Positions 16,014-58,263 of a stretch of 64,000 nt of DNA are shown here, piece after piece. Both the position numbers and the translations under genes were made by a program. The stretch lies in contig NIVC01003376.1 in NCBI GenBank assembly GCA_002269645.1, positions 37,026 through 101,025 on the forward strand, given 5' to 3'. Each line of letters begins with the position of its first letter. The stretch's first letter is position 1. The notes beneath the pieces were generated by a model, which saw only the letters and a program-made list of their open reading frames with translations, was not told the DNA's origin and made no database searches. This DNA is from Macrostomum lignano. Lineage: Eukaryota.

Positions 16014-25243
<9,230 letters not shown>

Positions 25244-26335: not shown

Positions 26336-26744
26336 GCCGTATATTCTTCAAGCCACATCAACTTCGTTTAAGGATTAATCATGATTGTCAACTGTACATC
26401 ATTGATTTTTTATTTCGTTTAGATAAGATATTTTTACCCAGTTTGTTTGTCACCTGTTTTCTTAATGTTCCTCAAACGTTTTGCACCTATATATTCCGCG
26501 AAGTCATTGTTTCTACTTAAGTAGACTATTTCAAATGTTAGTAGTATTTTCTCATCGCGAAGTAGGGTTTTCTGTTTTCAATCAAAATCTTGAAGCATTG
26601 CTTGATTTTCAATTGTAATTTGTGGCCTCATAATACAAAAAACACTTACAATGCTCTTCTTTATTATTTTTTGTGCAGTTGTAGCTGTAAACAGTTGTTT
26701 GTTAATTGCAGTTACCCTAAAATTACATCTACTCATTTTAGTAA

Positions 26745-37297: not shown

Positions 37298-39205
37298 CAC
37301 TGACTGACTCACTGACTGACTCACTGACTCACTGACTGACTCACTGACTGACTGACTGACTGACTGACTGACTGACTGACTCACTGACTCACTGACTGAC
37401 TGACTGACTCACTCACTCACTGACTCACTCACTGACTCACTCACTGACTCACTGACTCACTCACTCACTCACTGACTCACTGACTGACTGACTGACTGAC
37501 TGACTGACTGACTGACTGACTGACTGACTGACTGACTGACTGACTCACTGACTCACTGGCTGACTGACTCACTCACTCACTCACTGACTCACTCACTGAC
37601 TGACTCACTGACTCACTCACTGACTCACTCACTGACTCACTCACTGACTCACTGACTGACTGACTGACTGACTGACTGACTGACTCACTCACTGACTGAC
37701 TGACTCACTCACTCACTCACTGACTCACTCACTGACTGACTCACTGACTCACTGACTCACTCACTGACTCACTGACTGACTGACTGACTGACTCACTGAC
37801 TGACTCACTGACTGACTGACTGACTGACTGACTCACTGACTCACTCACTGACTCACTCACTGACTCACTCACTGACTGACTGACTATCTATCCTGATACG
37901 AGGTTATTTACGAGATAGATGTGTAGAGACGATCTATCTATCTATCTATTTAATAAGACATGCCCCATCCATTATAATCACCGCAGTTTTCATTCGGCTA
38001 CGCTATCGTTAACCACGAAGGCCGGAACTTGTCCTACGCTGGCGGCCGCACAGTCAAGGACTTTCGCGCCTACTCGTTGGCAGCTCGAAGTTCACAAGCA
38101 CTGTTTGAAATGTTAAAACCGCGCCTACACCCTGCTGTAATGTGCTGCGGAGTCTATAGTCTGCCAACTTATACTAGGCGTTATTTCGATCAGCTGGGCG
38201 GTGACCTGACAACTAGAGTTGTGCTGCGCAACCAGCAGCTGGGATTTGAATGCTCGGCCGACTACCTGGCTGCTTTAGCTAATAGATTTGCTACTGGGCC
38301 TTCCTCTAGTCTAGAGGAGCCTCACTTAGTGTCCAATCCTGTTGACTTCTTGTGCTCAGAGTCGGTCTGCAGCAGTACAGAGAACCGCCTGTTTAAGCCT
38401 CAACAGTATATACTTGTTGCTAAGGAACCGCTGACAATCTCTAGAGGCAATCTGCTTATTTGGAGAAAATTTCTGCATCAGGTTAGTTTATATTGTTTTA
38501 TTCATTGTCTATGTCACTCAAATTTGTCACTGTTATAATGACCAGCTGTCACTCTAATAATGACTAGTTGTCACATCTGTCACTCTAATAATGACTAGCT
38601 GTCACATCTGTCACTCAAATAATAAGTAGCTTTCATATCTGTCACTCTAATAATGACTAGTTGTCACATCTGTCACTCTAATAATAAGTAGCTGTCATAT
38701 CTGTCACTCTAATAATGACTAGTTGTCACATCTGTCACTCTAATAATGACCATCTGTCACATCTGTCACTAATAATGACCATCTGTCACTCCAGTAATGA
38801 CCAACTGTCACATCTGTCACCAAAACCGCGCCTCAGGTGATGGCCAGTTACTCGGAGCCTGGCCCGGCGCCCACCGGTGAAGTAACCGGTGTCAGCATAG
38901 CCAACTGGACTTCAGTACCGGTTGGCGGGCTCCACCTGGTGCTGAACATCTACTGCCGGACAGAATCGGACGCAGTCGGACATCTGGCCGGTCAGTTACG
39001 AACGGCCGTTAGTCGGCTTCGACTGTCGGATCCACAGCGGCACCGCCTGTACATCAGCGCATTTGTGCCTTCGCACCTGCTGTTTAATGAGACTCTGTCT
39101 GGGCTTCGGCTGCACCCGCTGCTCAGGGATCTGCCGCATTCCTACTCACCGAAACTGGCCTGCGATGCTCGTATTGTGGCCTGGTCTCCCGGAACCTTTG
39201 TCTAA
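36234..39205 (+). CDS. NAT16/histidine N-acetyltransferase-like GNAT, paralog 1 (about 420 aa). Exons 36234-36632, 37987-38481, 38837-39205
   Basis: LQLRLATLDDRDQVLSIEPDIHYGLDYLPDYY resembles the NAT16 N-terminus (IYGGLDYLP); three phase-0 GT-AG junctions; same exon structure as paralog 2. Confidence 0.75.
36640..37885. repeat. (GACT)n/(CACT)n tetranucleotide tract filling NAT16-1 intron 1
   Basis: Direct. Confidence 0.97.
38540..38822. repeat. About 31-bp minisatellite (CTAATAATGACTAGTTGTCACATCTGTCACT)n filling NAT16-1 intron 2
   Basis: Tandem array. Confidence 0.9.
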
Positions 39206-40754: not shown

Positions 40755-43430
40755 ATGTCGTCAGTCGCCGCTCTCTGCACTCGCCGCTTCCTGTCCACGG
40801 CTGGGCAGCGTCGAGTCACCTCGTTGAGCCAAATCAGCATGCACGCTAATTTAGAGGAGAAATTTAAAAAATTTCCCATACCGAAAGAGAATTTACAATT
40901 TCGTTTGGCCACTTTGGCGGATAAAGCGGAAGTGTTGAAAATTGAACCGGATATTCACTACGGACTCGATTATATGCAGGATTATTACGATGAAATTATC
41001 AGGCATGATGATCGCTACGGAATTGTGGCTGTTGATACCGTTAATAATAAAATTGTAAGTCATGAGCTAAATAATCAAAGTATATTCTGTATTTTGAGTT
41101 TGTGTCTGTTTTCTTATTTTGCAGTTTATTGTGTCTTGTGTGTCCTATTGTACATTCAGTGCAATGCATTAGTCTATGGCTTTGTGTCCCTAATGTACAT
41201 TCAGTACACAGAATTAGCCTATGGCTTTATCTCTAATGTACATCCAGTACACAGCATTAGTCTATGGCTCTGTGTCCCTAATGTATATTCAGTACACAGC
41301 ACCAGTCTATGGCCCTATCTCTAATGTACATTCAGTGCACAGCATTAGTCTATGGCCCTATCTCTGATGTACATTCAGTACACAGCACCAGTCTATGGCT
41401 CTGTCCCTAATGTACATTCAGTACACAGCATTAGTCTATGGCCCTATCTCTAATGTACATTCAGTACACAGCATTAGTCTATGGCCCTATCTCTAATGTA
41501 CATTCAGTATACAGCACCAGTCTATGGCCCTATCTCTAATGTACATTCAGTATACAGCACCAGTCTATGGCCCTATCTCTAATGTACATTCAGTACACAG
41601 CACCAGTCTATGGCCCTATCTCTAATGTACATTCAGTACACAGCACCAGTCTATGGCCCTATCTCTAATGTACAATCAGTACACAGCACCAGTCTATGGC
41701 CCTATCTCTAATGTACATTCAGTACACAGCACCAGTCTATGGCCCTATCTCTAATGTACAATCAGTACACAGCACCAGTCTATGGCCCTATCTCTAATGT
41801 ACATTCAGTACACAGCACCAGTCTATGGCCCTATCTCTAATGTACATTCAGTACACAGCACCAGTCTATGGCCCTATCTCTAATGTACAATCAGTACACA
41901 GCACCAGTCTATGGCCCTATCTCTAATGTACATTCATTACACAGCATTAGTCTATGGCCCTATCTCTAATGTACATTCAGTACGCAGCACCAGTCTATGG
42001 CCCTATCTCTAATGTACATTCAGTACACAGCACCAGTCTATGGCCCTATCTCTAATGTACATTCAGTACACAGCACCAGTCTATGGCCCTATCTCTAATG
42101 TACATGGCTCTATGGCTCTGTGTCCCCTCTAAACCCTGCAGCTCACATTTGCCTACGCAATCGTGAACGAAGGCGGTCGCAATCTGTCGTTCGGCGGTGG
42201 TCGAACTGTAGCAGGTGTCAGGGATTTCGGCCTGATGTCTTACGCCACTCGAGCTCTATTGGAGCATCTGCAGCCCCGTCTGCATAGCCTAGCCGGCTGT
42301 TGCGGTGTCTACAGCCTTCCAGTTTATAATAGAAACTTCTTTGAGAATCGTCAACACCTACTAAAAGTAGTGCTACACAATCAACAATTAGGATTTGAAT
42401 GTACAGCGGATTATTGGGAAAATTTGGCAACGAGATTTGCGGCTAGCGAACCGCGACAAGGCGAGCCGGTGCCAGTGTCCGATCCTGTCCAGTTTCTCAG
42501 CTCTGAGTCTGTTTGCAGTAGCACTGAGAACCGGTTGTTTAAACCTGACCAACACATTCTCATTGCCAAGGAGTCCCTTGTACTGTCTAAAGGCAATCTG
42601 AAAATATGGAATAACTATCTGCATCAGGTAACACTTGAAGTACTTTTTCATGGAAACCAATTGGATGACGACCGATCATTACCATATACACTATAGACCA
42701 AGACTAAGACATTAGACCTACCAAGATTCTCCTCACCAAGATTCTTCCCACTAAGATTCTTCCCACCAAGATTCAGCTTTTCACCAAGATTCTCCCCACC
42801 AAGATTCCTCCCACCAAGACTCCCCACTAAAATTCTCCCCACCAATCTTCTTCACACCAAGATTCTCCTCACCAAGATTCTTCCCACTAAGATCCCCCGC
42901 CAAGACTCTCCCCAACAGGATTCTTCCCACCAAGATTCAGCTTTTCACCAAGATTCTCCCCACCAAATTCTCCCAAAGAGCTGCTCAGTTGCTTCAAGCA
43001 AATAGGCGATACGAAAACAATAGTTTAATTAAATAAAATTTATCCCAAACCCGCGCCCCAGGTGATGGCCAGTTACTCGGAGCCTGGCCCGGGGCCCACC
43101 GGTGAAGTAACCGGTGTTAGCATAGCCAACTGGACTTCAGTACCGGTTGGCGGGCTCCACCTGGTGCTGAACATCTACTGCCGGACAGAATCGGACGCAG
43201 TCGAACATCTGGCCGGTCAGTTACGAACGGCCGTTAGTCGGCTTCGACTGTCGGATCCACAGCGGCACCGGCTGTACATCAGCGCATTTGTGCCTTCGCA
43301 CCTGCTGTTTAATGAGACTCTGTCTGGGCTTCGGCTGCACCCGCTGCTCAGGGATCTGCCGCATTCCTACTCACCGAAACTGGCCTGCGATGCTCGTATT
43401 GGAGCCTGGTCACCTGGCGCCTATGTCTGA
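40755..43430 (+). CDS. NAT16/histidine N-acetyltransferase-like GNAT, paralog 2 (about 384 aa) with mitochondrial-presequence-like N-terminus. Exons 40755-41054, 42142-42627, 43062-43430
   Basis: MSSVAALCTRRFLSTAGQRR; LQFRLATLADKAEVLKIEPDIHYGLDY; same intron positions and phases as paralog 1. Confidence 0.75.
41145..42105. repeat. 43-bp minisatellite (AATGTACATTCAGTACACAGCACCAGTCTATGGCCCTATCTCT)n filling NAT16-2 intron 1
   Basis: Tandem array. Confidence 0.95.
42718..42978. repeat. CACCAAGATTCTCCC-type minisatellite in NAT16-2 intron 2
   Basis: Same core as 45340-46900. Confidence 0.85.
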
Positions 43431-45339: not shown

Positions 45340-46900
45340 TCAAGAATTCAACAAGATTCCCCGGCCCACCAAGATTCTCCCCACTAAAAATCTCCCCACC
45401 AATATTCCCCCACCAAGATTCTCCCCTTAAGATTCTCCTCACCAAGATTCTCTCCCCCAATATTCCCCCACCAAAACTACCCACCAAGATTCTCTCCACC
45501 AAGATTCTCTCCCCCAATATTCCCCCACCAAAACTACCCACCAAGATTCTCTCCACCAAGATTCTCTCTCCCAATATTCCCCCCACCAAAACTACCCACC
45601 AAGATTCTCTCCCCCAATATTCCCCCACCAAAACTACCCACCAAGATTCTCTCCACCAAGATTCTCTCTCCCAATATTCCCCCCACCAAAACTACCCACC
45701 AAGATTCTCTCCCCCAATATTCCCCCCACCAAAACTACCCACCAAGATTCTCTCCACCAAGATTCTCTCTCCCAATATTCCCCCACCAAAACTACCCACC
45801 AAGATTCTCTCCCCCAATATTCCCCCACCAAAACTACCCACCAAGATTCTCTCCACCAAGATTCTCTCCCCAATATTCCCCCACCAAAACTACCCACCAA
45901 GATTCTCTCCCCCAATATTCCCCCACCAAAACTACCCACCAAGATTCTCTTCCCCAATATTCCCCCACCAAAACTATCCATCAAGATTCCCCCACCAAGA
46001 TTCTCTCCCCCAATATTCCCCACCAAAACTACCCACCCAGATTCTCTCCCACAATATTCCCCCACCAAAACTACCCACCAAGATTCTCTCCACCAAGATT
46101 CTCTCTCCCAATATTCCCCCACCAAAACTACCCACCAAGATTCTCCCCACCAAGATTCTCTCCCCCAATATTCCCCCACCAAAACTACCCATCAAGATTC
46201 TCCCCACCAAGATTCTCTCCACCAAGATTCTCTCCCCCAATATTCCCCCACCAAAACTACCCACCAAGATTCTCTCCCCCAATATTCCCCCACCAAAACT
46301 ACCCACCAAGATTCTCTTCCCCAATATTCCCCCACCAAAACTACCCATCAAGATTCTCTCCCCCAATATTCCCCCACCAAAACTACCCACCAAGATTCTC
46401 TCCCCCAATATTCCCCCACCAAAACTACCCACCAAGATTCTCTTCCCCAATATTCCCCCACCAAAACTATCCATCAAGATTCCCCCACCAAGATTCTCTC
46501 CCCCAATATTCCCCCACCAAAACTACCCACCAAGATTCTCTTCCCCAATATTCCCCCACCAAAACTATCCATCAAGATTCCCCACCAAGATTCTCTCCCC
46601 CAATATTCCCCCACCAAAACTACCCACCAAGATTCTCTCCACCAAGATTCTCTCTCCCAATATTCCCCCACCAAAACTACCCACCAAGATTCTCCCCACC
46701 AAGATTCTCTCCCCCAATATTCCCCCCACCAAAACTACCCATCAAGATTCTCTCTCCCAATATTCCCCCACCAAAACTACCCACCAAGATTCTCTTCCCC
46801 AATATTCCCCCACCAAAACTATCCATCAAGATTCCCCCACCAAAACTACCCATCAAGATTCCCCCACCGAGATTCTCCTCCAAAATTGTTCTCACCAAGA
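45340..46900. repeat. About 42-bp minisatellite (CCACCAAGATTCTCTCCCCCAATATTCCCCCACCAAAACTAC)n
   Basis: Tandem array; explains the 581-aa PPKLPTKIL ORF. Confidence 0.93.
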
Positions 46901-47074
46901 TCTGAACTATGTTAGAACGTTTGCACATTCTAGTACTACAGTAGCTAATATCGATGGCACATATATTTTTTTAATTATATAAAATTCAAATTAAACTTCT
47001 ACTGTTCCCTTTGCTGACACTTCTGCGTAAAACACCTATTAGAAGCATTAATTAATTAATTACTAAGTAGAGCA

Positions 47075-48626
47075 ATGGTTAAAGACTCGAAAGAGGCTGC
47101 AACCGGTACGAGCCACGGCGATGTCAATCTGTCGGAGACTTCGACTCCAAGATTGCCGAGTTTCGAAAGTTTAGAAACCGAGGAGCGAACCGCGTTCAGC
47201 ATGAGCTACGATTTGCTCCGCTACAACCTGGAGAACATGCCGCTGCCGCCTGATGTCAATCACGAGGCCGAGGCTGTGGCCGAGTCTGCAAGCAGGGAGC
47301 TGCTGGGCGACTCTAACGAGGTGACCTGACAACCTAGTTGAATGGTGATATCTGCGTGTTGGCCAACCGCCACAACTCCCAGATCCTTAGATATTGAGCT
47401 AGAATCCCAGATCCTCAGTTGCTGGGCCAGCCTCCCAGATCCCCAGTTGCTGGGCCAGCCTCCCAAATCCTCTGTTGCTGGGCCACCAGCCTCCAAGATC
47501 CTAAGTTGCTGGGCCAGCCTCCCAAATCCCCAGTTGCTGGGCCACCAGCCTCCCAGATCTTCAGTTACTGGGCCAGCCTCCCAGAGTGTCAGTCTCTGGA
47601 CCAGCCTCCCAAATCCTCAATTTCTGGACCACCAGCCTCCCAGATCTTCAGTTGCTGGGCCAGCCTTCCAGATCCTAAGTTGCTGGGCCAGCGTCCCAGA
47701 TCCTCAGTTGCTGGGCCAGCGTCCCAGAGTGTCAGTCTCTGGACCAGCCTCCCAAATCCTCAATTTCTGGACCACCAGCCTCCCAGATCTTCAGTTGCTG
47801 GGCCAGCCTCCCAGATCCTAAGTTGCTGGGCCAGCGTCCCAGATCCTCAGTTGCTGGACCACCAGCCTCCCAGATCCTCAGTTGCTGGGCCAGCCTCCCA
47901 GATCCTAAGTTGCTGGGCCAGCGTCCCAGATCCTCAGTTGCTGGACCACCAGCCTCCCAGATCCTCAGTTGCTGGACCAGCCTCCCAGATCCTCAGTTGC
48001 TGGACCAGCCTCCCAGATCCTCAGTTGCTGGACCAGCCTCCCAGATCCTCAGTTGCTGGACCAGCCTCCCAAATCCTCCCAGTTGTACTCTTATTAGCTT
48101 CTTGTGTCACGCGACCAATGAACAAAAAACTCTATAGGTGAACAACCTGCTCCGGTCCCCACTGGGCACCCAGCTGAGCAGCAGCAGCCTTGGGCAGGAG
48201 ATGTCCCGACTCGCCGACGAGTTCCGCGCCTCTCGCCAGGGCACCCAGGCGGATCAGCTGGCCGCCAGCGTGAACCTATCGGAGCTGTCTAGCAATCCCC
48301 ATAGCTTCACTGACATTCTCGAACAGCTGTTCCACTCCGGCTACAATGTGGAATCGTTCGTAGCTCTGTTCCATTTTGTTGCTAGGCTGTTGCAGCGTGC
48401 CTACTTTGAAGGCGGCGAATCCGTGTTCAAGGATCTGTGCAAACAGCTCATGTTTGCTTTCCTAACCTATCTGCTGGCTAACCTGATCAAGTTTCTGGCT
48501 AATATGTTTCGAAATCTTAGCCAGAGGCGTCAGGAAGCTCTGTTGGGTTTTTTGTCCGGTCTTGCCGTGGCTTCTGCCGCCTGCGCCGTTGTTGGCTATT
48601 TTGTACTGCGGAATATTGATAAGTGA
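47075..48626 (+). CDS. Divergent Bcl-2-family tail-anchored protein A (about 244 aa). Exons 47075-47320, 48138-48626
   Basis: BH4-like SYDLLRYNL; BH3-like LGQEMSRLADEF; BH1-like FTDILEQLFHSGYNVESFVALFHF (NWGR replaced by NVES); C-terminal TM LLGFLSGLAVASAACAVVGYFVL+RNIDK; phase-0 GT-AG intron. Confidence 0.65.
47395..48078 (+). repeat. Minisatellite family P filling the intron of Bcl-2-like A
   Basis: Same unit as 22088. Confidence 0.92.
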
Positions 48627-48714
48627 GGTTGGTTATAAACTGTCTTTTCATCGGTATTATACTGGCAATATTGTTGTTTGGCATCGGGCATGGTGCATGG
48701 ACTGCTATAGTCGA

Positions 48715-49518
48715 AACAGAGAGCGCCATATATTTTGAGTGTGTCAGAAAGCGTCATTTTGAGTGTGTGTCAGAAAGCGCCATTTTGAGTGTGTGTCAGA
48801 AAGCGCCATTTTGAGTGTGTGTCAGAAAGCGCCATTTTGAGTGTGTGTCAGAAAGCGCCATTTTGAGTGTGTGTCAGAAAGCGCCATTTTAGTGTCAGAA
48901 AACGTTGCTTGAAGGTGTCAGAAAGCGCCATTTGAAGGTGTCAGAAAGCGCCATTTGAGTGTATCAGCGTCATTTAAGTGTGTCAGAAAGCGCCATTTGA
49001 TTGTGTCAGAAAGCGCCATTCGTGTTTCAGAAAGCGCCATTCGTGTGTGTGTCAGAAAGCGCCATTTGAGTGTGTCAGAAAGCTCTATTTGAAGGTGTCA
49101 GAAAGCGCCATTTGAGTGTGTCAGAAAGCTCCAGTTGAAGGTGTCAGAAAGCGCCATTTGAGTGTGTCAGAAAGCGCCATTTGAGTGTGTCAGAAAGCGC
49201 CATTTGAGTGTGTCAGAAAGCTCCAGTTGAGTGTGTCAGAAAGCGCCATTTGAGTGTGTCAGAAAGCTCCAGTTGAAGGTGTCAGAAAGCGCCATTTGAG
49301 TGTGTCAGTAAGCTCCAGTTGAAGGTGTCAGAAAGCTCCAGTTGAAGGTGTCAGAAAGCGCCATTTGAGTGTGTCAGAAAGCTCCAGTTGAAGGTGTCAG
49401 AAAGCTCCAGTTGAAGGTGTCAGAAAGCGCCATTTGAGTGTGTCAGAAAGCTCCAGTTGAAGGTGTCAGAAAGCTCCAGTTGAAGGTGTCAGAAAGCGCC
49501 ATTTGAGTGTGTCAGAAA
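48715..49518. repeat. About 23-25-bp minisatellite (GTGTCAGAAAGCGCCATTTGAGT)n
   Basis: Tandem array. Confidence 0.93.
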
Positions 49519-50099
49519 GATTATGAGTCAGAACTTTACAAAGCTATCGCATATCGCATGTTTATTCAAGTTTTTAAAAAAGCTAAAAGTTTTGTTATAA
49601 TCAAGTTTAATTATTAATTAATTAATCTGTTTTTCCACTTGTCACTTATCTGGTTCTAACAAATAACAGGGTAACTTGTATTTTTTTACTTTTTTTCAAT
49701 TTTGCTATTCAGAATTTGTTAAATATCTGCCAAAATTTTGAATTGGTGCGAAAACTCGGCCAAAATGATTTATACGAGCTAACGATCATGAGTTGACTTT
49801 TATATTATACTTCCTTCATGTGCAAATATATACGAGCGTATATTTGACTTATTATGTAATTCTCTTGCTACTAAAGTGCAATTTTTGCTACTGTCAGTAA
49901 TTTTAACATTTTAATAAAAATGTTATTCTGTACTTTCATTTGCTTTTTAACTGAGCAAAAAATACAAATATAAAGAAGTCATTGTTTTGCTTTGCTGTTA
50001 ACGAGCTATCTGTTTTCCAGCCGTTTACCTTTACCAATTGAGGTTTTCTTGCTTTTGCTTAAAGGTATTACGGCATCTGACGTTTGCAAATTTAATACA

Positions 50100-51190
50100 G
50101 TCTAAGATCCCAAATCCCAGATCCCAAATCCAGTCTTAAGATCCCAGATCCCAAATCCAGTCTTAAGATCCCAGATCCCCAATCCAGACTGAGATCTCAG
50201 ATTCCCAATACAGTCTTAAGATCCCAGATCCCCAATACAGTCTTAAGATCCCAGATCCCCAATCCAGTCTGAGATCCCAGATCCCCAATACAGTCTTAAC
50301 ATCCCATCTCCAATACAGTCTTAAGATCCCAGATCCCTAATCCAGTCTTAAGATCCCATATCCCCAATCCAGTCTTAAGATCCCATATCTCCAATACAGT
50401 CTTAAGATCCCAGATCCCAAATCCAGTCTTAAGATCCCAGATCCCCAATCCAGACTGAGATCTCAGATTCCCAATACAGTCTTAAGATCCCAGATCCCCA
50501 ATACAGTCTTAAGATCCCAGATCCCCAATCCAGTCTGAGATCCCAGATCCCCAATACAGTCTTAACATCCCATATCTCCAATACAGTCTTAAGATCCCAG
50601 ATCCCCAATCCAGACTGAGATCCCAGATCCCCAATACAGTCTTAAGATCCCAGATCCCCAATCCAGTCTGAGATCCCAGATCCCCAATACAGTCTTAACA
50701 TCCCATCTCCAATACAGTCTTAAGATCCCAGATCCCTAATCCAGTCTTAAGATCCCATATCCCCAATCCAGTCTTAAGATCCCATATCTCCAATACAGTC
50801 TTAAGATCCCAGATCCCCAATCCAGACTGAGATCCCAGATCCTCAATCCAGTCTTAAAATCCCAGATCCCCAATCCAGTCTTGAGATCCCAGATCTCAAA
50901 TCCAGACTGAGCCCCAGATCCCCAATCCAGTCTTAAGATCCCATATCCTCAATACAGTCTTAAAATCCCATCTCCAATACAGTCTTAAGATCCCATATCC
51001 CCAATCCAGTCTTAAGATCCCAGATCCTCAATCCAGTCTTAAGATCACAGATCCCTAATCCAGTCTTAAGATCCCAGATCCTCAATCCAGTCTTAAGATC
51101 CCATATCCCTAATCCAGTCTTAAGATCCCATATCCCTAATCCAGTCTTGAAATCCCAGATCCCCAATCCAGACAGAGATCTCAGATTAAA
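50100..51190. repeat. About 27-bp minisatellite (CAGTCTTAAGATCCCAGATCCCCAAT[C/A])n
   Basis: Tandem array. Confidence 0.93.
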
Positions 51191-51261
51191 GTCATAAAAT
51201 AGAATCCCAGTTTTCAGGCCAACAACTATTGTATTGCATGCCTATAAACAGCAATACAACT

Positions 51262-52452
51262 ATGGAAAAGAAATCCACTGAGCAGTCCTACGTAGCAGAA
51301 GAGGAAGCGGACCAGACTGTTCCAACGGTGCCAGAGTACGATTATAACGAGCTCAACCCTGTTGAGCAGCACGTGCTAGAAGCCACCACTGGTCTCCTGA
51401 CCAGCACTGCAGCCCAAGAGGTGCCAGACATCAATATTAACACGCTCACTACCGTGGCCGCCCAAGAAACGGTGAACGCTCCGCCTGATTTTGTGGACAG
51501 AGCCCAGGCAAGCCTTCGAAACAGCGATGTCGGACTGCAGCTCAGGCGGTATGCCGCCGATTTTGCCTCCACGCAGGAAGCTGGGCGGTTGCGCACCTTG
51601 GCTGATCAGTTTATTCAGCAGCGAATCACGTGAGTTCACAAGACTTTTGGGGCAGCCTTCCAGATCCTCAGTTGCTGGGCCAGCCTTCCAGATCCTCAGT
51701 TGCTGGGCCAGCCTCCCAGATCCCCAGTTGCTGGGCCAGCCTTCCAGATCCTCAGTTGCTGGGCCAGCCTTCCAGATCCCCAGTTGCTGGGCCAGCCTTC
51801 CAGATCATCAGTTGCTGGGCCAGCCTTCCAGATCCCCAGTTGCTGGGCCAGCCTTCCAGATCCCCAGTTGCTGGGCCAGCCTCCCAGATCCCCAGTTGCT
51901 GGGCCAGCATCCCAGATCCTCAGTTGCTAGGCCAGCCTCCCAGCTCCTCAGTTGCTGGGCCAGCCTTCCAGATCCTCAGTTGTTGGGCCAGCCTCCCAGA
52001 TCCTCAGTCGCTGGGCCAGCCTCCCAGATCCTCAGTTGCTGTGCCACCATCCCAGATACCCCAGCCATTTTGTTAAAATACTTACTCTACTATAGGATGC
52101 ATTCTATCCATTGCTCAGGTACGCGCGCCTCGTGAACCAGCTAGAGACGGAATTCCACCGCAGCTACGACTTGAATGGCCTTGTCCGGGTCCAGTTCTTT
52201 GTAGCCCACTTGTTGCCTGGTGTGCTTCGATCGGCTATTAACCAGAATCCCCAGGCCGATTGTTTGCGTCTAATAAAGTACTTTCTGCTCTATCTGGGCA
52301 GGTGTCGCGTGCTTAGCCTGGCTGCTAGGATTTTTAGCGAGGCCAGACGCCACTGGGGTCATGCCGCCATTTTTTTTGCCGGTTTCAGCATCGGCTCCGT
52401 GGTTGCCACCACTGCTATAATGGTGCTGTACTTGAGAAAGAACAATAGTTGA
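51262..52452 (+). CDS. Divergent Bcl-2-family tail-anchored protein B (about 233 aa), paralog of A. Exons 51262-51629, 52119-52452
   Basis: BH3-like VGLQLRRYAADF; segment LETEFHRSYDLNGLVRVQFFVAHLL aligns to LEQLFHSGYNVESFVALFHFVARLL of A; C-terminal TM + RKNNS; phase-2 GT-AG intron restores the frame. Confidence 0.55.
51645..52055 (+). repeat. Minisatellite family P filling the intron of Bcl-2-like B
   Basis: 28-bp variant of the 22088 unit. Confidence 0.92.
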
Positions 52453-52604: not shown

Positions 52605-53095
52605 TGTTTGCTCTGTTTTCTCTCCCCTCTTTCCAGTTCAGTCTTGTTATTCTTATCTCTCTCCGTCGCTGCCTTCTGATTGGCTCTTCAATCTCGCCTG
52701 TTTCCTCAGTCGCGCGCTCCACCCCCATCGTCTCTTTTTACTCTGTTTTTCTCTCCCTTAGTCCAGTTCAGCCTTGTTATTCTTATCTCTCCCCCTCGCT
52801 GCCTTCTGATTGGCTCTTCAATCTCGCCTGTTTCCTGAGTCGCGCGCTCCACCCCCATCGTCTCTTTTTACTCTGTTTTTCTCTCCCTTAGTCCAGTTCA
52901 GCCTTGTTATTCTTATCTCTCCCCCTCGCTGCCTTCTGATTGGCTCTTCAATCTCGCCTGTTTCCTGAGTCGCGCGCTCCACCCCCATCATCTCTTTTTA
53001 CTCTGTTTTTCTCTCCCTTAGTCCAGTTCAGTCTTGTTATTCTTATCTCTCCCCCTCGCTGCCTTCTGATTGGCTCTTCAATCCTTATTCACGCG
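52605..53095. repeat. 130-bp tandem repeat, about 4 copies
   Basis: CTCTGTTTTT anchor at 52741, 52871 and 53001. Confidence 0.92.
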
Positions 53096-53929
53096 CTCCT
53101 TTCTTATATGCACTCAGCCCACCCCCACTAATTGAAATTCACTAGTTTTGAGCCATGCGCCATACTTACGCTCGTACTGTGTTTTTTGTTTCTAACTTTC
53201 GAACTGCGCGTGTGTAAGAGAGTGCGTTTTGTGCTGATTATTTAAAAGCTTTGTTTTTTATTATTCAATCGCCTTTGCCTTGACTTGACAATTTAATTAA
53301 AAATTGATGCTTACTCATTTTTTGATGTTTTACTTATGTACATAGGCAATATTAAGTTCCACTTATTGATTAATTCGCACATTCGCCTGCTTTCAATTTC
53401 TGCTCAACTCGGCTATTTTATTGTTTTAATATTTTTAAACGCTATTTGTTATACCTTTTTATTGGATAGGGTGCTATATACTCGGCAACATTCAAAGGCT
53501 GAAGTTTTTTCCAGCTAAGTTACAGTGCAAGCCAATGAAATATTTGTGTGAAATATTTATACAGGACAATCATTACTTAATAATGACTTTTACAGTATAA
53601 AATCATTTTCAAGTTTTGGCGTGTCTTGACTCATACATCTTTCCTTTTTCTAATTTAAATTAGAAAATTAGAATGTATTTTTTAAAGCGGTTCAAATTTT
53701 TATAGAAGTTTTGCGTTGCATTAAAATAAATGACAATAAATTATTTGAATCTTTCTTTTAATCGCATCTTATATTTTCAGCAGCATGTTTCGCTTTGCTT
53801 ATTTATTATTTTAAGTTACAGTAAAAGTGTATCATTTGTCTACATATCATGTACTTTTATTAGTTTTTTTACTATGATTAAGAGCTGTAGCACTGTTTAG
53901 TGTAGGTTTTCTTCTAGTTGAACTCGTCT

Positions 53930-54040
53930 GTCTGCCTGACTGTCACAGTATCTGTCTGTCTGTCTATCTATCTGTCTGGTTGTTCCTGTGTCTATCTATC
54001 TGTCTGGTTGTTCCTGTGTCTATCTGTCTGTCTGCCTGTA

Positions 54041-54077
<37 letters not shown>

Positions 54078-54144
54078 GTCTGGTTGTTCCTGTGTCTATC
54101 TATCTGTCTGGTTGTTCCTGTGTCTATCTGTCTGTCTGCCTGTA

Positions 54145-54181
<37 letters not shown>

Positions 54182-54260
54182 GTCTATCTATCTGTCTGGT
54201 TGTTCCTGTGTCTATCTATCTGTCTGGTTGTTCCTGTGTCTATCTGTCTGTCTGTCTGTA

Positions 54261-54303
<43 letters not shown>

Positions 54304-54383
54304 GTCTGTCTGTCTGTCTGTTTGTCATAGGGTCTGTCTGTCTGTCTGTCTCTGTCTGTCTGTCTGTCTGTTTGTCATAGGGT

Positions 54384-54475
<92 letters not shown>

Positions 54476-54485
54476 TTGTCATAGG

Positions 54486-54519
<34 letters not shown>

Positions 54520-54670
54520 TTGTCATAGGGTCTGTCTGTCTGTCTGTCATAGGTCTGTCTGTTTGTCATAGGGTCTGTCTGTCTGTCTGTCATAGGTCTG
54601 TCTGTTTGTCATAGGGTCTGTCTGTCTGTCTGTCTGTCATAGGTCTGTCTGTCTGTCTGTTTGTCATAGG

Positions 54671-54713
<43 letters not shown>

Positions 54714-54715
54714 AG
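53930..54715. repeat. (TCTG)n-rich microsatellite
   Basis: Direct. Confidence 0.95.
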
Positions 54716-54911
54716 ACTGTCCATCTGTCAAAGTGTGAATTTGTCTGTCTGTGTTACACTTTCTATCCCTTGTCGTACGCTCGTCTCAAGTGTTCAAAAT
54801 ACCCTCTGTGGATGAGATGTTTTTGGCCATAGACAAAAGCTTACAAACAATATATTATATATTAATGATTAGTTTAGCTAATGATCTGTTTATTTTCAAA
54901 TCTTGCTGGCA

Positions 54912-55379
54912 ATGAGCTTGAGTCGCGTCTGTCTAAGCAGCATTAGCCGCCGCTTTTTATCCTCTTCATCGTCATCTTTGAGATCGAAAAATCGCATATC
55001 GGAAAGTGTAGGCCCGCCAGATCCTCGATCTTGCATCCGGCCGGTTGATGTGAAAATCGGTGACGAGTTAAGAGACATCCAGGCCAGGTGCTATCGCGAT
55101 AAACGTCTGGCCGCGTTCGACCTTTGCCACAAGCACTGGGCGGCGCACAATCAGGCATTCAAGCTGGCTAAAGACAGATTCTCGATTATTAAACGAACTG
55201 AGCTGGCGTTTGCACCCGAGGAGCAGCTGATGCCGGACCAGATGGCCGAGTTCTATAGGCAGTTTCTTGAGCAGACTCGCCAGGGTCAGTACGAGTTTAA
55301 TCGATTGTGGTATCGAACTCTGCTCGGGCTGCTTGTTGCTCAGGCTAAACTCTCTTTACCCAAGCGGATGTCTAAGTAG
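54912..55379 (+). CDS. COA8: Cytochrome c oxidase assembly factor 8 / apoptogenic protein 1 (155 aa, single exon)
   Basis: Presequence MSLSRVCLSSISRRFLSS; VGPPDPRSCIRPV, HWAAHNQAFKLAKDRF, QMAEFYRQFL, FNRLWY match COA8/APOPT1 motifs. Confidence 0.88.
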   Translation: MSLSRVCLSSISRRFLSSSSSSLRSKNRISESVGPPDPRSCIRPVDVKIGDELRDIQARCYRDKRLAAFDLCHKHWAAHNQAFKLAKDRFSIIKRTELAFAPEEQLMPDQMAEFYRQFLEQTRQGQYEFNRLWYRTLLGLLVAQAKLSLPKRMSK

Positions 55380-55559: not shown

Positions 55560-56222
55560 AATCTGTCTGTCTCTCTGTGTCTTGTCTGTGTGTCTGTCTG
55601 TCTGCCTGTGTCTTGTCTGTCTGTCTTTGTGTGTCTGTCTATGTCTTGTCTGTCTGTCTGTCTGCCTGTGTCTTGTCTGTCTGTCTTTGTGTGTCTGTCT
55701 GTGTCTTGTCTGTCTGTCTGTCTGCCTGTGTCTTGTCTATGTCTGTCTGCGTCTTGTCTGTCTGTCTGTCTGCCTGTGTCTTGTCTGTGTCTGTCTGTGT
55801 CTGTCTGTCTGCCTGTGTCTTGTCTGTGTCTGTCTGTGTCTTGTCTGTCTGTGTGTCTGTGTCTGTCTGTCTGTGTCTTGTCTGTGTCTGTCTGTCCGTC
55901 TGTCTGTGTCCTGTCTGTCTGTCTGTCTATGTCTGTCTGTGTCTTGTCTGTCTGTCTGTCTGTGTCTGTCTGTCTGTGTCTTGTCTGTCTGTCTGTCTGT
56001 GTCTGTCCTTGTCTTGTCTGTCTGCCTGTGTCTTGTCTGTCTGTCTGTCTGCTTGTGTCTTGTCTGTGTGTCTGTGTCTGTCTGTCTGTCTGTCTGTATC
56101 TTGTCTGTGTCTATGTCTTGTTTGTGTGTTTTGTCTGTCGGTCTTTGTGCCTGTCTGTCTGTCTGTCTGTATCTTGTCTCTGTCCGTCTATGTCTTGTTT
56201 GTGTGTTCTGTCTGTCTGTCTG
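55560..56222. repeat. (TGTC)n-rich microsatellite
   Basis: Direct. Confidence 0.95.
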
Positions 56223-57128: not shown

Positions 57129-58263
57129 TTTGTAAAAAAATATAGATAAACTCAAAGATCGTTAAAGAAAATCGTTAAATAAAAATTTCTGATGATGAAA
57201 AACAAAGAAGTACAAAAGGTCGACCTTATTTCTTACCATCACAAGCCAGACGCGGTCTCCAACAGTTTAACAGTAGCTCCGGCAGCCTGGGTTCGAGTGC
57301 CTCTCCATCTGAGCAGTTTAACTACACATCTGGCTGTCGACGGCTTCCGTTATCATCACGCCGAAGGCTACTACGCGACTCTGGTGAAATGGCTGAGGCC
57401 AGGACGGCCAAGTAAAGTGCCTCGGTTTGGCACGCATCAGCTCGGGGTTGCAGGCTTGCTCATTGATGACGAGTCGTTGCTGTGCGTCCGCGAGCATCGG
57501 TTGCCGCCTAAACAGGTTAGAGATAAAAATTATAATTTCTATTTTAATGTTTGCCACTACGGGCGTAATAGTGCCATACATGCGCAACAGCCGACCGATT
57601 TGGCGGCCAACCAAGGGTAAGTCGCAAAAATGCCCACCCCAAAGAATAGACGTAGTACTAATTAGACGACGAAGCATTTTGCCTTTATAAGACAGTCATA
57701 GTTACTCCTGCCGTTTACCCTAAATTGCGTTAATTTTGCCTAATGGTTTCTTTCACAGGTAAGTCATTCAGTCATCATTGCCTCTCTCGCAGGGCGCCCA
57801 GACCAAGAAGCCTCACCAGTCGCCATGGAAACTACCAGGCGGTGTCGCCGATTTAGGCGAAGAAATTGGCGACGCGGCTGTTCGCGAAGTCGCGGAAGAA
57901 ACCGGCATCGCGGCGCGATTCGAGTCTGTGCTGGCCTTTCGTCATCATCACTGGCATCCGATGGCTTTTAATCGGTCAGATTTTTATGTACTGTGCCGAC
58001 TGAGTCTTGATGGACAGCGGCGAGGCGAGTTGAAACCGTGTCCAGATGAGATTTCCAAGGTTGATTGGCTGACAGTGTCCCAGCTTGATGCACTGCCGAC
58101 AGAGGAGGTGGCCCCGATTCTGCGGGCATCTCTGCCGCTGATTAGACTCGGATTAAGAAACGGTTTTAAGACGGTCGATATGCAAAGATTTGCATTGCAC
58201 TCGTTGTATACGGCTAAACGGGTTAGTCTGTATCACAGGCCGTTGCTGGGTGAAGTCGAGTAA
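56362..58263 (+). CDS. NUDT6: Nudix hydrolase NUDT6-like (about 321 aa). Exons 56362-56590, 57250-57515, 57793-58263
   Basis: DRYGGV, AWVRVP, GFRYHHAE, LVKWL, VPRFGTHQLGVAG, WKLPGG, intact Nudix box GVADLGEEIGDAAVREVAEETGI, FRHHH, SDFYVLCRL; junction phases 1 and 0 are consistent. Confidence 0.9.
56698..57126. mobile_element. Head-to-head pair of 5'-truncated SINE copies with (TTA)n tails in NUDT6 intron 1; third copy at about 63130-63335
   Basis: 56698-56930 (minus) and 56972-57126 (plus) share GGGGTAATTGAGG..TGTGTGGCGACCCC..CTGAACAGCCGTACGCAGC..GCACATC..AATTGGGGCAGGTGTAATCAA(TTA)n; the minus copy also has TGTGTCCTTGAGCA...TCACCCAGCTGTAAAATGGGT, resembling V/Meta-type SINE cores. Confidence 0.65.
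57575..57755 (+). mobile_element. Truncated MITE family A in NUDT6 intron 2
   Basis: Starts CATACATGCGCAAC and is colinear with 12639-12830. Confidence 0.85.

What the first reader, a model, noticed from the sequence alone, without database searches (positions are those of the whole stretch)
47075..52452. Tandem pair of highly divergent Bcl-2-like proteins with no NWGR and no BH2 tryptophan motif
Seen: both have a BH3-like helix (LGQEMSRLADEF; VGLQLRRYAADF), a shared helix-5 signature FH..Y....V...FVA.LL and a basic-tailed C-terminal TM. Known: canonical multi-BH proteins need BH1 NWGR to bind BH3 ligands. Here it is NVES or DLNG, and B lacks the BH3 Asp at the canonical position while carrying a second BH3-like stretch (LRTLADQF). 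Their introns differ in position and phase, which implies an old duplication or independent intron gain. Inference: a lineage-specific Bcl-2 subfamily acting as BH3-exposing sensitisers, mitophagy receptors or mitochondrial-dynamics factors, of interest in a regenerative animal.
Basis: partly seen in the sequence, partly recalled or inferred. Interest (0 to 1): 0.7.

Follow-up and report, generated by a model that had tools for sequence, protein, structure and literature searches.

The report
Divergent flatworm Bcl-2-like gene pair
Two neighbouring genes of the flatworm Macrostomum lignano encode real, expressed, very divergent members of the Bcl-2 cell-death family that have lost two of the family's signature motifs; this is a modest addition to a known family, and their function is untested.

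Summary
Window 47075-52452 (Macrostomum lignano) carries two two-exon genes on the + strand. Gene A is 244 aa and gene B is 233 aa. My splice models match existing transcript-based annotation exactly. A and B are paralogues (27% identity). A third, intronless paralogue (P0008) lies on another contig.

All three are homologous to Bcl-2-domain proteins. An HMM built only from chelicerate 'BAX-like' proteins that pass Pfam Bcl-2 scores them at 82, 64 and 32 bits, against at most 8.7 bits for 3000 shuffles. Profile-profile E is 1.4e-21. AlphaFold models are of moderate confidence and their best PDB neighbours are BAK, Bcl-xL, Bcl-2 and BAX, but the Foldseek E-values are not significant.

NWGR is replaced by NVES in A and DLNG in B. 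The BH2 'GGW' is gone. A tail anchor is present. Only A keeps a canonical BH3 core. Two copies of the locus differ with dN/dS of about 0.1. B's mRNA is recorded as trans-spliced, and A, B and the downstream COA8/APOPT1 gene share one transcriptional-unit name.

'Lineage-specific divergent Bcl-2 subfamily' is supported. The proposed roles (sensitiser, mitophagy receptor, dynamics factor) are untested. Subfamily affinity (BAX, BAK or other) is unresolved. Interest is modest.

The parts
47075..47320 (+). Gene A exon 1 (codons 1-82): N-terminal region including predicted helix 1
   Evidence: The spliced product is 100% identical to UniRef A0A1I8IHC3. AF2 helices at 35-54 and 59-77.
47321..48137 (+). 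Gene A intron, phase 0, GT..AG; 703 of its 817 nt are a 28-nt minisatellite (47376-48078)
   Evidence: The same intron in the second locus copy is 866 nt.
48138..48626 (+). Gene A exon 2 (codons 83-244 plus stop): Bcl-2-like domain and tail anchor
   Evidence: Pfam Bcl-2 E 1.4e-5, 26 bits, residues 104-198. Bcl-w E 0.0025. 64 bits against the chelicerate-only HMM.
48189..48224 (+). A BH3 / helix 2: LGQEMSRLADEF (aa 100-111), with the canonical core (h1-h4 hydrophobics, small residue, Asp)
   Evidence: Aligned to the BAX BH3 and to the chelicerate 'LRRLADEFARS'.
48345..48356 (+). A BH1 position: NVES (aa 152-155) in place of NWGR
48537..48608 (+). A predicted C-terminal transmembrane anchor (aa 216-239), followed by RNIDK
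   Evidence: Hydropathy. AF2 helix 211-243.
51262..51629 (+). Gene B exon 1 (codons 1-122 plus 2 nt of codon 123)
   Evidence: Same splice as PAA51693.1 and PAA81188.1.
51529..51564 (+). B helix-2 / BH3-equivalent: VGLQLRRYAADF (aa 90-101); Ala replaces the canonical Asp
51589..51612 (+). B 'second BH3-like' LRTLADQF (aa 110-117), at the helix-3 position
   Evidence: It fits the core regex, but so do 6.5% of shuffles. AF2 helix 105-119.
51630..52118 (+). Gene B intron, phase 2, GT..AG; 410 of its 489 nt are the same 28-nt minisatellite (51648-52057) in the same orientation
   Evidence: The same intron is 772 nt in the second locus copy.
52119..52452 (+). Gene B exon 2 (last nt of codon 123 to the stop): helices 4-8 and tail anchor
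   Evidence: 32 bits, E 1.3e-8 against the chelicerate-only HMM.
52168..52179 (+). B BH1 position: DLNG (aa 140-143) in place of NWGR
52366..52434 (+). B predicted C-terminal transmembrane anchor (aa 206-228), followed by RKNNS
   Evidence: Hydropathy. AF2 helix 205-232.
54912..55379 (+). Downstream single-exon COA8/APOPT1 (DUF2315) gene. It shares the transcriptional-unit name with A and B and is joined to them in the fusion model A0A1I8F377.
   Evidence: Pfam PF10231 E 4e-21. P0007. Mlig002791.g5 = DUF2315. Same gene order in the second locus copy.

Best explanation
A and B are two of three Macrostomum lignano paralogues of a very divergent, tail-anchored, multi-helix branch of the Bcl-2 family.

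Shown:
- They are intact, spliced, transcribed genes under purifying selection.
- Each is homologous, collinearly from helix 2 (BH3) to the C-terminal anchor, to Bcl-2-domain proteins.
- The conserved positions among the three paralogues are mostly core hydrophobics of helices 2, 4, 5 and 6 and of the anchor.
- The NWGR Gly and Arg and the BH2 Gly-Gly-Trp are replaced.
- Only A keeps a canonical BH3 core.

Inferred:
- They sit in the mitochondrial outer membrane (or ER) through the tail anchor and keep a Bcl-2-type helical bundle.
- The canonical BH3-receiving groove is remodelled. The Arg that normally pairs with the ligand's Asp is gone, and so is the Trp that packs helices 7/8 against BH1. 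They are therefore unlikely to act as classical pro-survival BH3 receptors.
- The most likely role is as effector-derived or accessory regulators of mitochondrial outer-membrane integrity.
- A, with an intact BH3, could present its BH3 to canonical M. lignano Bcl-2 or Bak-type partners, or self-associate through it.
- B and P0008 have lost the BH3 Asp and would act through the membrane-embedded core or by hetero-association with A.
- A, B and the mitochondrial COA8/APOPT1 gene are probably made from one SL-trans-spliced polycistronic precursor.
For: Gene models
- identical to the annotation.
- That annotation is built from RNA-seq-derived transcriptional units (PMC5730564).

Paralogy
- A versus B: E 5e-6.
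- Third paralogue P0008: E 5e-21 to the A+B profile.

Family membership
- Pfam Bcl-2 on A: E 1.4e-5.
- PDB Bcl-w: E 0.0025, with NVES under NWGR.
- The A+B profile finds chelicerate proteins at E 7e-8 to 5e-4 in 1.84 billion sequences. These pass the Pfam Bcl-2 gathering score at 36-54 bits.
- An HMM built from those proteins alone scores P0008 82, A 64 and B 32 bits. The best of 3000 shuffles scores 8.7.
- hhalign between the Macrostomum clade and the chelicerate group: probability 99.4%, E 1.4e-21, 136 columns.
- A versus BAX is collinear from BH3 to the tail, E 1e-4.

Fold
- AF2 model of A: pLDDT 71 overall, 79-92 over residues 100-200. All 50 top Foldseek PDB hits are Bcl-2 family, with probability up to 0.99 and TM to target about 0.5.
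- AF2 model of B: pTM 0.61, nine helices with a helix-5/6 break. All hits with probability of at least 0.35 are BAK, BAX, BHRF1, Bcl-2 or Bcl-xL.

Selection
- 9 synonymous against 3 non-synonymous differences between the two locus copies. dN/dS about 0.10, P = 2.6e-4.

Expression and operon
- B's transcript cluster is flagged TRANSSPLICED with 19-95 reads per library.
- Mlig002791.g2 is A.g3 and .g7 are B, and .g5 is DUF2315/COA8.
- The same A-B-COA8 order is seen in NIVC01000544.1.
Against: - Formal thresholds are missed. A is below the Pfam gathering score (26 against 31.4 bits) and B has no Pfam hit.
- No Foldseek hit reaches E 0.001. In the best model of A, helices 5 and 6 form one continuous 56-residue helix rather than a hairpin. 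The models rest on only 13-14 sequences.
- Membrane location, partners and any effect on cell death are untested.
- Subfamily affinity is unresolved. The chelicerate intermediates are closest to BAX (77 bits against 64 for Bcl-xL; hhalign 111 against 99.5 for Bcl-2). The Macrostomum profile compared directly scores BAK 38, Bcl-xL 35, Bcl-w 34, Bcl-2 27 and BAX 25, and all its PDB hits are weak.
- Co-transcription is inferred from gene names and a fusion model, not from reads I inspected.
Confidence: 0.6

Rival explanations
1. These are non-apoptotic or sensitiser-type outer-membrane proteins: a mitophagy receptor of the BCL2L13/NIX type, a mitochondrial-dynamics factor, or a constitutively BH3-exposed sensitiser.
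For: - Tail anchor plus a long N-terminal region modelled with low to moderate confidence.
- An aromatic-x-x-Leu motif with acidic or Ser/Thr neighbours is conserved at the same alignment position in all three paralogues: A 30-33 FESL, B 28-31 YNEL, P0008 26-29 FEEL.
- UniProt names A 'Miff domain-containing protein'.
- Linkage, and probably co-transcription, with the mitochondrial gene COA8.
- Loss of the groove-defining residues.
Against: - [WFY]xx[LIV] is a four-residue pattern expected often by chance. Here it lies at the N-cap of the helix-1 region, which aligns with BAX-like helix 1.
- The Pfam-A scan at E up to 10 found no Miff hit.
- Nothing was tested functionally.
- Only A has a canonical BH3, so 'BH3-exposing' cannot hold for B or P0008.
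Confidence: 0.2
2. They are classical pro-survival Bcl-2 proteins that still bind BH3 ligands in a groove built from different residues, as viral Bcl-2 homologues do.
For: - Top single-sequence PDB hits include Bcl-w and Bcl-xL.
- Viral homologues without recognisable BH motifs still bind Bak, Bax or Bim (PMC7022251).
Against: - Simultaneous loss of the NWGR Gly/Arg and the BH2 Trp.
- The closest relatives (the chelicerate group) match BAX best.
- In the helix-5 stretch of the A-BAX alignment, FVALFHFVARLLQRA of A lies under VVALFYFASKLVLKA of BAX with 8 of 15 identities.
Confidence: 0.1
3. They are decaying duplicates or annotation artefacts with no function.
For: - Extreme divergence and loss of the signature motifs.
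- B is expressed at a low level.
- The genome is repeat-rich and highly duplicated.
Against: - Intact ORFs and canonical splice sites in two locus copies.
- dN/dS about 0.1.
- Transcript-derived models and a trans-spliced mRNA.
- Conserved hydrophobic core positions across three paralogues.
Confidence: 0.04
4. The Bcl-2 resemblance is a chance match of a helical tail-anchored protein that happens to carry a BH3-like short motif.
For: The BH3 core regex alone occurs in 5-8% of shuffles. No Foldseek E-value is significant.
Against:: E values from 1e-8 to 1e-24 against independent Bcl-2-domain profiles, with shuffles scoring at most 8.7 bits. The alignment is collinear from BH3 to the TM segment.
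Confidence: 0.02

Closest known systems
Chelicerate 'apoptosis regulator BAX-like / Bcl-2-like' proteins, uncharacterised. Examples: Varroa XP_022651856.1, Galendromus XP_018497745.2, Limulus XP_013784388.2, Parasteatoda XP_015906600.1, Uloborus XP_054712797.1.
   Same: - Apart from the M. lignano paralogue P0008, they are the only relatives below E 1e-3 in 1.84 billion representatives.
- They share a BH3 of the form G-x-x-L-x-R-L-A-D-E-F-A-x-S (the 7-mer SRLADEF is identical in A and P0009).
- They share the helix-5 pattern 'LV.LFFF' and a tail anchor ending in a basic residue followed by Asn.
- NWGR is also absent, replaced by SRER, TRER, TGEG, NKHC and similar.
   Different: - They keep an invariant BH2 'GGW' and pass the Pfam gathering score.
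- Many keep an Arg at the fourth BH1 position.
- Identity to A or B is only 16-28% overall.
- They come from a different phylum, so orthology is not established.
BAX (human, PDB 1F16) and BAK (PDB 2IMS): the pore-forming effectors
   Same: - Collinear helix 2 (BH3) to helix 9 (tail anchor).
- A keeps a complete BH3 core.
- In the helix-5 stretch of the A-BAX alignment 8 of 15 residues are identical.
- BAK and BAX are among the best structural neighbours.
- BAK is the best hhalign reference for the Macrostomum profile. BAX is the best for the chelicerate intermediates.
   Different: - No NWGR, so no Arg to pair with the BH3 Asp in a BH3-in-groove dimer.
- No BH2 Trp.
- The BH3 Asp is lost in B and P0008.
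- Direct similarity is weak: A versus BAX E 1e-4 pairwise, profile against PDB E at least 0.01.
Atypical cellular Bcl-2 members with degenerate BH1/BH2: BCL2L13 (Bcl-rambo), BCL-G (BCL2L14), Bfk, Trichoplax Bcl-2L4, mouse Boo
   Same: - Family members in which signature motifs are missing or altered. BCL-G lacks BH1 (PMC10244440, abstract shown). Trichoplax Bcl-2L4 lacks the NWGR Gly and is suspected of having a non-functional groove, and Boo has Ser at that position (PMC8998228).
- BCL2L13 is tail-anchored and acts as a mitophagy receptor (my own knowledge).
   Different: No specific sequence relationship to any of them was detected. BCL-G and Bfk lack a tail anchor, and BCL2L13 has a long unique C-terminal extension (my own knowledge). 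These comparisons were not tested with tools.
Characterised platyhelminth Bcl-2 proteins (Schmidtea/Dugesia Bak and Bcl-2 orthologues; Schistosoma Bcl-2-like and BH3-only proteins)
   Same: Same phylum and same family. Flatworms use a Bcl-2-regulated pathway dependent on outer-membrane permeabilisation (MOMP) and cytochrome c release (PMC7022251 and PMC8998228).
   Different: No flatworm protein outside M. lignano reached E 1e-3 with the A+B profile. The published lophotrochozoan Bcl-2 phylogeny did not include M. lignano. It reports only BAK among the pro-apoptotic members in flatworms (PMC11463336).

Membership tests
Bcl-2 family (Pfam PF00452, multi-BH proteins) | Match to the PF00452 profile at the curated gathering score (31.4 bits) | tested here: not met
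   A scores 26.0 bits, E 1.4e-5, covering profile positions 1-90 of 100. B has no hit. P0008 scores 23.7 bits.
Bcl-2 family (Pfam PF00452, multi-BH proteins) | Statistically significant homology to proteins that do pass PF00452 | tested here: met
   The chelicerate-only HMM scores P0008 at 82, A at 64 and B at 32 bits, against at most 8.7 for 3000 shuffles. hhalign E 1.4e-21. Library-wide E values of 7e-8 to 5e-4. Those proteins score 36-54 bits on PF00452.
Bcl-2 family (Pfam PF00452, multi-BH proteins) | Bcl-2-type helical bundle: a central helix-5/6 hairpin wrapped by amphipathic helices | tested here: inconclusive
   AF2 pLDDT is 71 (A) and 69 (B); pTM is 0.49 and 0.61. The best PDB neighbours are Bcl-2 family only (A) or mainly (B), with probability up to 0.99 and TM to target about 0.5, but E is at least 0.09. 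Helices 5 and 6 are fused in the model of A.
Bcl-2 family (Pfam PF00452, multi-BH proteins) | BH3 core on helix 2 (h2-x-x-h3-small-Asp-x-h4) | tested here: met
   Met for A (MSRLADEF, preceded by L100). Not met for B (LRRYAADF, Asp replaced by Ala) or for P0008 (LLQIANEF, Asp replaced by Asn) at the homologous position.
Bcl-2 family (Pfam PF00452, multi-BH proteins) | BH1 signature NWGR | tested here: not met
   NVES in A, DLNG in B, SLEA in P0008, all at the aligned position.
Bcl-2 family (Pfam PF00452, multi-BH proteins) | BH2 signature with an invariant Trp (GGW) | tested here: not met
   A has no Trp. 'QRRQEALLGF' of A aligns with 'QGGWEGLLSYF' of BAX. B has a single displaced W202. GGW is invariant in the chelicerate relatives.
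Bcl-2 family (Pfam PF00452, multi-BH proteins) | C-terminal tail anchor | tested here: met
   Hydropathy maxima at A216-239 and B206-228, each followed by basic residues. Modelled as terminal helices. This is a prediction only.
Bcl-2 family (Pfam PF00452, multi-BH proteins) | Regulates or executes mitochondrial outer-membrane permeabilisation; binds BH3 ligands | not testable with these tools
   No functional data exist for these genes. RNAi has been reported only for the neighbouring DUF2315/COA8 gene, with no reproducible regeneration phenotype (PMC7806878).
BAX subfamily | Closer to BAX than to any other Bcl-2 subfamily | tested here: inconclusive
   For the chelicerate intermediates, BAX scores 77 bits against 64 for Bcl-xL, and hhalign gives 111 for BAX against 99.5 for Bcl-2. 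PDB hits are all weak.
BH3-only proteins / sensitisers | BH3 as the only region of family similarity, with no Bcl-2 core | tested here: not met
   Similarity runs collinearly from helix 2 through helices 4-6 to the anchor.
Tail-anchored mitophagy receptors (BCL2L13, NIX, FUNDC1 type) | Cytosolic LIR ([W/F/Y]xx[L/I/V] with acidic or phospho-acceptor flanks) that binds Atg8/LC3 | tested here: inconclusive
   FESL, YNEL and FEEL are conserved at one alignment position in the three paralogues. The motif is short and expected by chance. Binding cannot be tested here.
Mff / Miff (Pfam PF05644), as UniProt's name for A suggests | Match to the Miff profile | tested here: not met
   There is no Miff hit in the Pfam-A scan of A or B even at E up to 10.

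The most novel reading that the evidence does not exclude
Macrostomid flatworms and chelicerates retain an old bilaterian, BAX-related Bcl-2 subfamily that gave up NWGR. In Macrostomum it triplicated and also lost the BH2 Trp and, in two of the three copies, the BH3 Asp. Two copies are expressed from an SL-trans-spliced operon together with the mitochondrial COA8/APOPT1 gene.

This would mean that flatworms did not simply lose BAX, as current surveys state. It would also mean that this clade works by a non-canonical mechanism, independent of the canonical groove, at the mitochondrial outer membrane.
Probability: 0.2. Interest if true: 0.5.

Novelty: new variant of a known kind. Interest (0 to 1): 0.33.

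Why it matters
M. lignano is a transgenic, regeneration-competent flatworm model, and flatworms use a Bcl-2-regulated, cytochrome-c-dependent death pathway. The published survey of lophotrochozoan Bcl-2 proteins did not include M. lignano. It concluded that flatworms keep only BAK among the effectors.

A three-gene clade that keeps the Bcl-2 core, a BH3 (in one copy) and a tail anchor, but lacks both the NWGR and the BH2 Trp, is a natural experiment. It asks which family signatures are needed for membrane activity and for BH3-in-groove pairing.

If the link to the chelicerate BAX-like proteins reflects ancestry, it changes the loss and gain picture for BAX in protostomes. The gain is incremental. 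Atypical Bcl-2 members are already known, and no function is shown here.

Tried and rejected
1. Acceptor at 52095 (the first AG after the satellite in B's intron). It breaks the frame with the only GT donor. The acceptor at 52118 restores the frame and matches the annotation.

2. Word-indexed homologue searches. A found only itself, B found nothing, and the 13-sequence profile found three proteins. Relatives came only from the exhaustive HMMER search.

3. B alone against Pfam and PDB. No hit. Its membership had to be shown through the chelicerate HMM.

4. Assigning a subfamily.
- PDB searches with the Macrostomum profile and with P0008 alone gave only weak, mixed Bcl-w, BAK and Bcl-xL hits.
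- hhalign against six human references was equally undecided.
- I therefore do not file the genes under BAX.

5. The 'Miff domain' name. Not reproducible.

6. The idea that the shared intron satellite marks homologous introns. Rejected for three reasons.
- The two introns differ in position and phase.
- The third paralogue is intronless.
- The same satellite occurs elsewhere in the window, including inside an intron of an unrelated glycosyltransferase gene.

7. Contamination or horizontal transfer from a mite. Rejected. Identity is only 16-28% overall (about 33% locally over the BH3-helix 5 region). The genes carry M. lignano satellites in their introns. They also sit among M. lignano genes in two independent contigs.

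8. Literature search for these gene identifiers. It found only the neighbouring DUF2315 gene and an expression table. The supplement of the lophotrochozoan apoptosis paper is not held.

Full report
**What is there**

The window is from Macrostomum lignano. Gene A's product is 100% identical to UniRef A0A1I8IHC3. The other cluster members are M. lignano GenBank proteins.

Gene A has exons 47075-47320 and 48138-48626, a phase-0 GT..AG intron and a 244-aa product.

Gene B has exons 51262-51629 and 52119-52452, a phase-2 GT..AG intron inside codon 123 and a 233-aa product. The first AG after the intron's repeat (52095) is out of frame. The acceptor at 52118 is the one used in GenBank PAA51693.1 and PAA81188.1.

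The one slip is that the helix-5 signature needs one more residue in each gap: FH..Y.....V....FVA.LL. A has no tryptophan. B has one, W202, just before its anchor.

**The genes are real**

The GenBank models carry names of the form BOX15_MligNNNNNNgN. These come from an annotation built from RNA-seq-derived 'transcriptional units', cut into genes at experimentally mapped trans-splice and poly(A) sites (PMC5730564).

An expression table lists B's transcript cluster (Mlig002791.g7, Mlig002791.g8 and Mlig028085.g1) as TRANSSPLICED, with 19-95 reads per library (PMC7806878, supplement 3).

A second copy of the locus (NIVC01000544.1, locus L001) has the same order A, B, COA8. Its coding sequences differ from the window by 9 synonymous and 3 non-synonymous changes. 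That gives dN/dS of about 0.10, P = 2.6e-4 against neutrality. Its introns differ in length: 866 against 817 nt in A, and 772 against 489 nt in B.

**They are Bcl-2-family proteins**

- A versus B: 27% identity, E 5e-6.
- A has a sub-threshold Pfam Bcl-2 match (26 bits, E 1.4e-5, gathering score 31.4). It also has a weak Bcl-w match (E 0.0025) in which NVES lies under NWGR.
- B alone hits nothing.
- A profile of the A and B C-terminal domains was searched against 1.84 billion representatives. It found a third M. lignano paralogue (P0008 = PAA50268.1, E 5e-21). It also found a dozen chelicerate proteins from Varroa, Galendromus, Limulus and spiders (E 7e-8 to 5e-4). Their sources name them 'apoptosis regulator BAX-like' or 'Bcl-2-like'.
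- Those chelicerate proteins pass Pfam Bcl-2 at 36-54 bits.
- An HMM built from the chelicerate proteins alone scores P0008 at 82 bits, A at 64 and B at 32. The best of 3000 shuffles of the three proteins scores 8.7.
- Profile-profile comparison gives probability 99.4% and E 1.4e-21 over 136 columns, from the BH3 helix to the tail.
- A aligns collinearly with BAX from BH3 to the anchor. NVES falls under NWGR and QRRQEALLGF under QGGWEGLLSYF.

**Fold**

The AlphaFold2 models were built from 13-14 sequence alignments and are of moderate confidence.

- Model of A: pLDDT 71 overall and 79-92 over residues 100-200; pTM 0.49.
- Model of B: pLDDT 69; pTM 0.61.
- For A, all 50 best Foldseek PDB matches are Bcl-2-family structures (BAK, Bcl-xL, Bcl-2, Bcl-w). 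Probability reaches 0.99 and TM to the target is about 0.5, but E is at least 0.09.
- For B, every match with probability of at least 0.35 is BAK, BAX, BHRF1, Bcl-2 or Bcl-xL, mixed with low-probability noise.
- B's model shows the expected nine helices with a break between helices 5 and 6. A's best model fuses helices 5 and 6 into one long helix.

I count the fold as consistent but not proven.

**State of the motifs**

| Feature | A | B | P0008 | Chelicerate relatives |
|---|---|---|---|---|
| BH3 core (helix 2) | L100-GQE-M-SR-L-A-D-E-F, complete | LRRYAADF, Ala at the Asp position | LLQIANEF, Asn at the Asp position | LRRLADEFARS |
| BH1 (NWGR position) | NVES | DLNG | SLEA | SRER, TRER, TGEG and similar |
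| BH2 (GGW) | absent | absent (displaced W202) | absent | GGW invariant |

B's LRTLADQF fits the BH3 core pattern but sits at the helix-3 position. The pattern appears in 5-8% of shuffles, so it may be chance.

Residues invariant across the three paralogues are mainly hydrophobic core positions of helices 2, 4, 5 and 6 and of the anchor. This fits a conserved fold with altered surface chemistry.

**Subfamily**

The chelicerate group is closest to BAX. In the PDB search BAX scores 77 bits against 64 for Bcl-xL. In hhalign BAX scores 111 against 99.5 for Bcl-2.

The Macrostomum profile, compared directly with six human references, is undecided: BAK 38, Bcl-xL 35, Bcl-w 34, Bcl-2 27, BAX 25 and BOK 15. 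Its PDB hits are all weak.

I therefore describe the clade as an orphan Bcl-2 branch. Its nearest detectable relatives are chelicerate BAX-like proteins, and I do not file it as BAX. The published lophotrochozoan survey did not analyse M. lignano Bcl-2 genes and reports only BAK among flatworm effectors (PMC11463336).

**Mechanism (inference)**

- Tail-anchored in the mitochondrial outer membrane or ER, with a Bcl-2-type core.
- The canonical groove is remodelled, because the Arg and Gly of NWGR and the BH2 Trp are gone. A classical pro-survival BH3-receptor role is therefore unlikely.
- A can still offer a BH3. B and P0008 cannot in the canonical way.
- The most likely role is as effector-derived or accessory regulators of outer-membrane integrity.

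They rest only on a short conserved [F/Y]xxL motif (A30-33, B28-31, P0008 26-29) and on a UniProt 'Miff' name that I could not reproduce.

The premise that NWGR is required for BH3 binding is overstated. [quoted passage not shown] Degenerate NWGR has already been discussed for Trichoplax Bcl-2L4 and mouse Boo (PMC8998228).

**Context**

A single-exon COA8/APOPT1 (DUF2315) gene lies 2.5 kb downstream of B on the same strand, at 54912-55379 (Pfam E 4e-21).

In the M. lignano nomenclature, Mlig002791.g2 is A.g3 and .g7 are B, and .g5 is DUF2315. The shared prefix marks a cluster of transcriptional units. An older gene model (A0A1I8F377, 606 aa) fuses A, B and COA8.

Its A-to-B junction uses a GT at 48623-48624, overlapping A's last codon and stop. 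It joins an AG at 51250-51251, 10 nt upstream of B's ATG. That acceptor is a good candidate for B's trans-splice site. The three genes are therefore probably one polycistronic unit. This is inferred, because I did not inspect reads.

**Introns**

Both introns are almost entirely the same 28-nt minisatellite in the same orientation. The introns are not homologous: their position and phase differ, and the third paralogue is intronless (L002 8001-8696).

The satellite also occurs at 22102-22966, at 24661-24859 (minus strand, inside an intron of a glycosyltransferase-2 gene) and at 25967-26336. Satellite-filled introns are thus a feature of this genome rather than of these genes. A is closer to the unlinked P0008 (35-36%) than to B (20-27%), so the tandem pair is old.

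**Verdict**

'Divergent lineage-restricted Bcl-2 subfamily' is supported, and the function is open. This is a new variant of a known kind and of modest interest.

Noticed in passing
window 47376-48078 and 51648-52057; also 22102-22966, 24661-24859 (minus strand), 25967-26336: One 28-nt minisatellite (CCCAGATCCTCAGTTGCTGGGCCAGCCT) makes up most of both Bcl-2-like introns, in the same orientation. The two introns are at non-homologous positions and phases, and the third paralogue (L002 8001-8696) is intronless. The satellite also fills an intron of an unrelated glycosyltransferase-2 gene. Array length differs between locus copies (817 against 866 nt, and 489 against 772 nt). A's intron is flanked by a 6-nt direct repeat, AGGTGA. 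This is possibly satellite-associated intron gain or expansion.
   Followed up: partly
window 54912-55379 (+): A single-exon COA8/APOPT1 (DUF2315, Pfam PF10231, E 4e-21) gene lies just downstream of B. It shares the transcriptional-unit prefix Mlig002791 with A and B and is fused to them in UniProt A0A1I8F377. This is probably an SL-trans-spliced operon of three mitochondria-related genes. Published RNAi of this gene gave no reproducible regeneration phenotype (PMC7806878).
   Followed up: partly
window 48623-48624 (GT) and 51250-51251 (AG): A consensus-like donor (GATAA|GTGAGG) overlaps gene A's last codon and stop. A good acceptor (aaacag|CAATACAACTATG) lies 10 nt upstream of B's ATG. Joining them gives the in-frame A-B fusion seen in A0A1I8F377. 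The acceptor is a candidate SL trans-splice site for B.
   Followed up: no
window 47162-47173 (A aa 30-33), 51343-51354 (B aa 28-31); P0008 aa 26-29: An aromatic-x-x-Leu motif with a preceding Pro and following acidic residues (PSFESLETEE, PEYDYNELNP, VPQFEELDTE) is conserved in all three paralogues at the N-cap of predicted helix 1. It looks like an LC3-interacting region but is short enough to be chance.
   Followed up: partly
UniRef A0A1I8IHC3 / A0A1I8H8V3 / A0A1I8IKY2 (gene A): UniProt calls gene A 'Miff domain-containing protein' (mitochondrial fission factor). A Pfam-A scan at E up to 10 shows no Miff hit, only Bcl-2.
   Followed up: yes
window 47048-47062 and 49611-49625: The motif TTAATTAATTAATTA (stops in all frames) occurs 13 nt upstream of gene A's ATG. 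It occurs again, in reverse complement with one mismatch, about 1 kb downstream of A's stop. About 0.01 matches are expected by chance in the window. Its meaning is unknown.
   Followed up: no
window 45365-46878, 48734-49519, 50114-51171, 52607-53083, 53926-54729, 55562-56222: The intergenic DNA around the pair is largely made of distinct tandem arrays. Periods are 15/42/57/84, 23, 27/80 and 130 nt, plus (GTCT)n. Strong C-over-G skew runs from about 42 to 52 kb.
   Followed up: no
window 38029-39205 and 42163-43430 (+): A tandem duplicate of an unannotated gene, with two ORFs in each copy. The second ORF (122 aa, MMASYSEPGP...) is nearly identical between the copies and has a weak Hisat_C hit (E 0.013). 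The first ORF has no Pfam match.
   Followed up: no
window 22986-25243 (+), 27348-28267 (+), 57778-58263 (+), 61865-63030 (+): Other genes in the window: a multi-exon glycosyltransferase family 2 gene, an ORF with a weak calponin-homology match, a NUDIX hydrolase ORF, and a reverse-transcriptase (RVT_1) fragment of a retroelement.
   Followed up: partly
L002 (NIVC01003683.1) 8001-8696: The third paralogue P0008 is intronless and not in tandem with another Bcl-2-like gene. Its downstream neighbour is an EF-hand protein. Of the three paralogues it is the closest to the chelicerate relatives (82 bits).
   Followed up: partly
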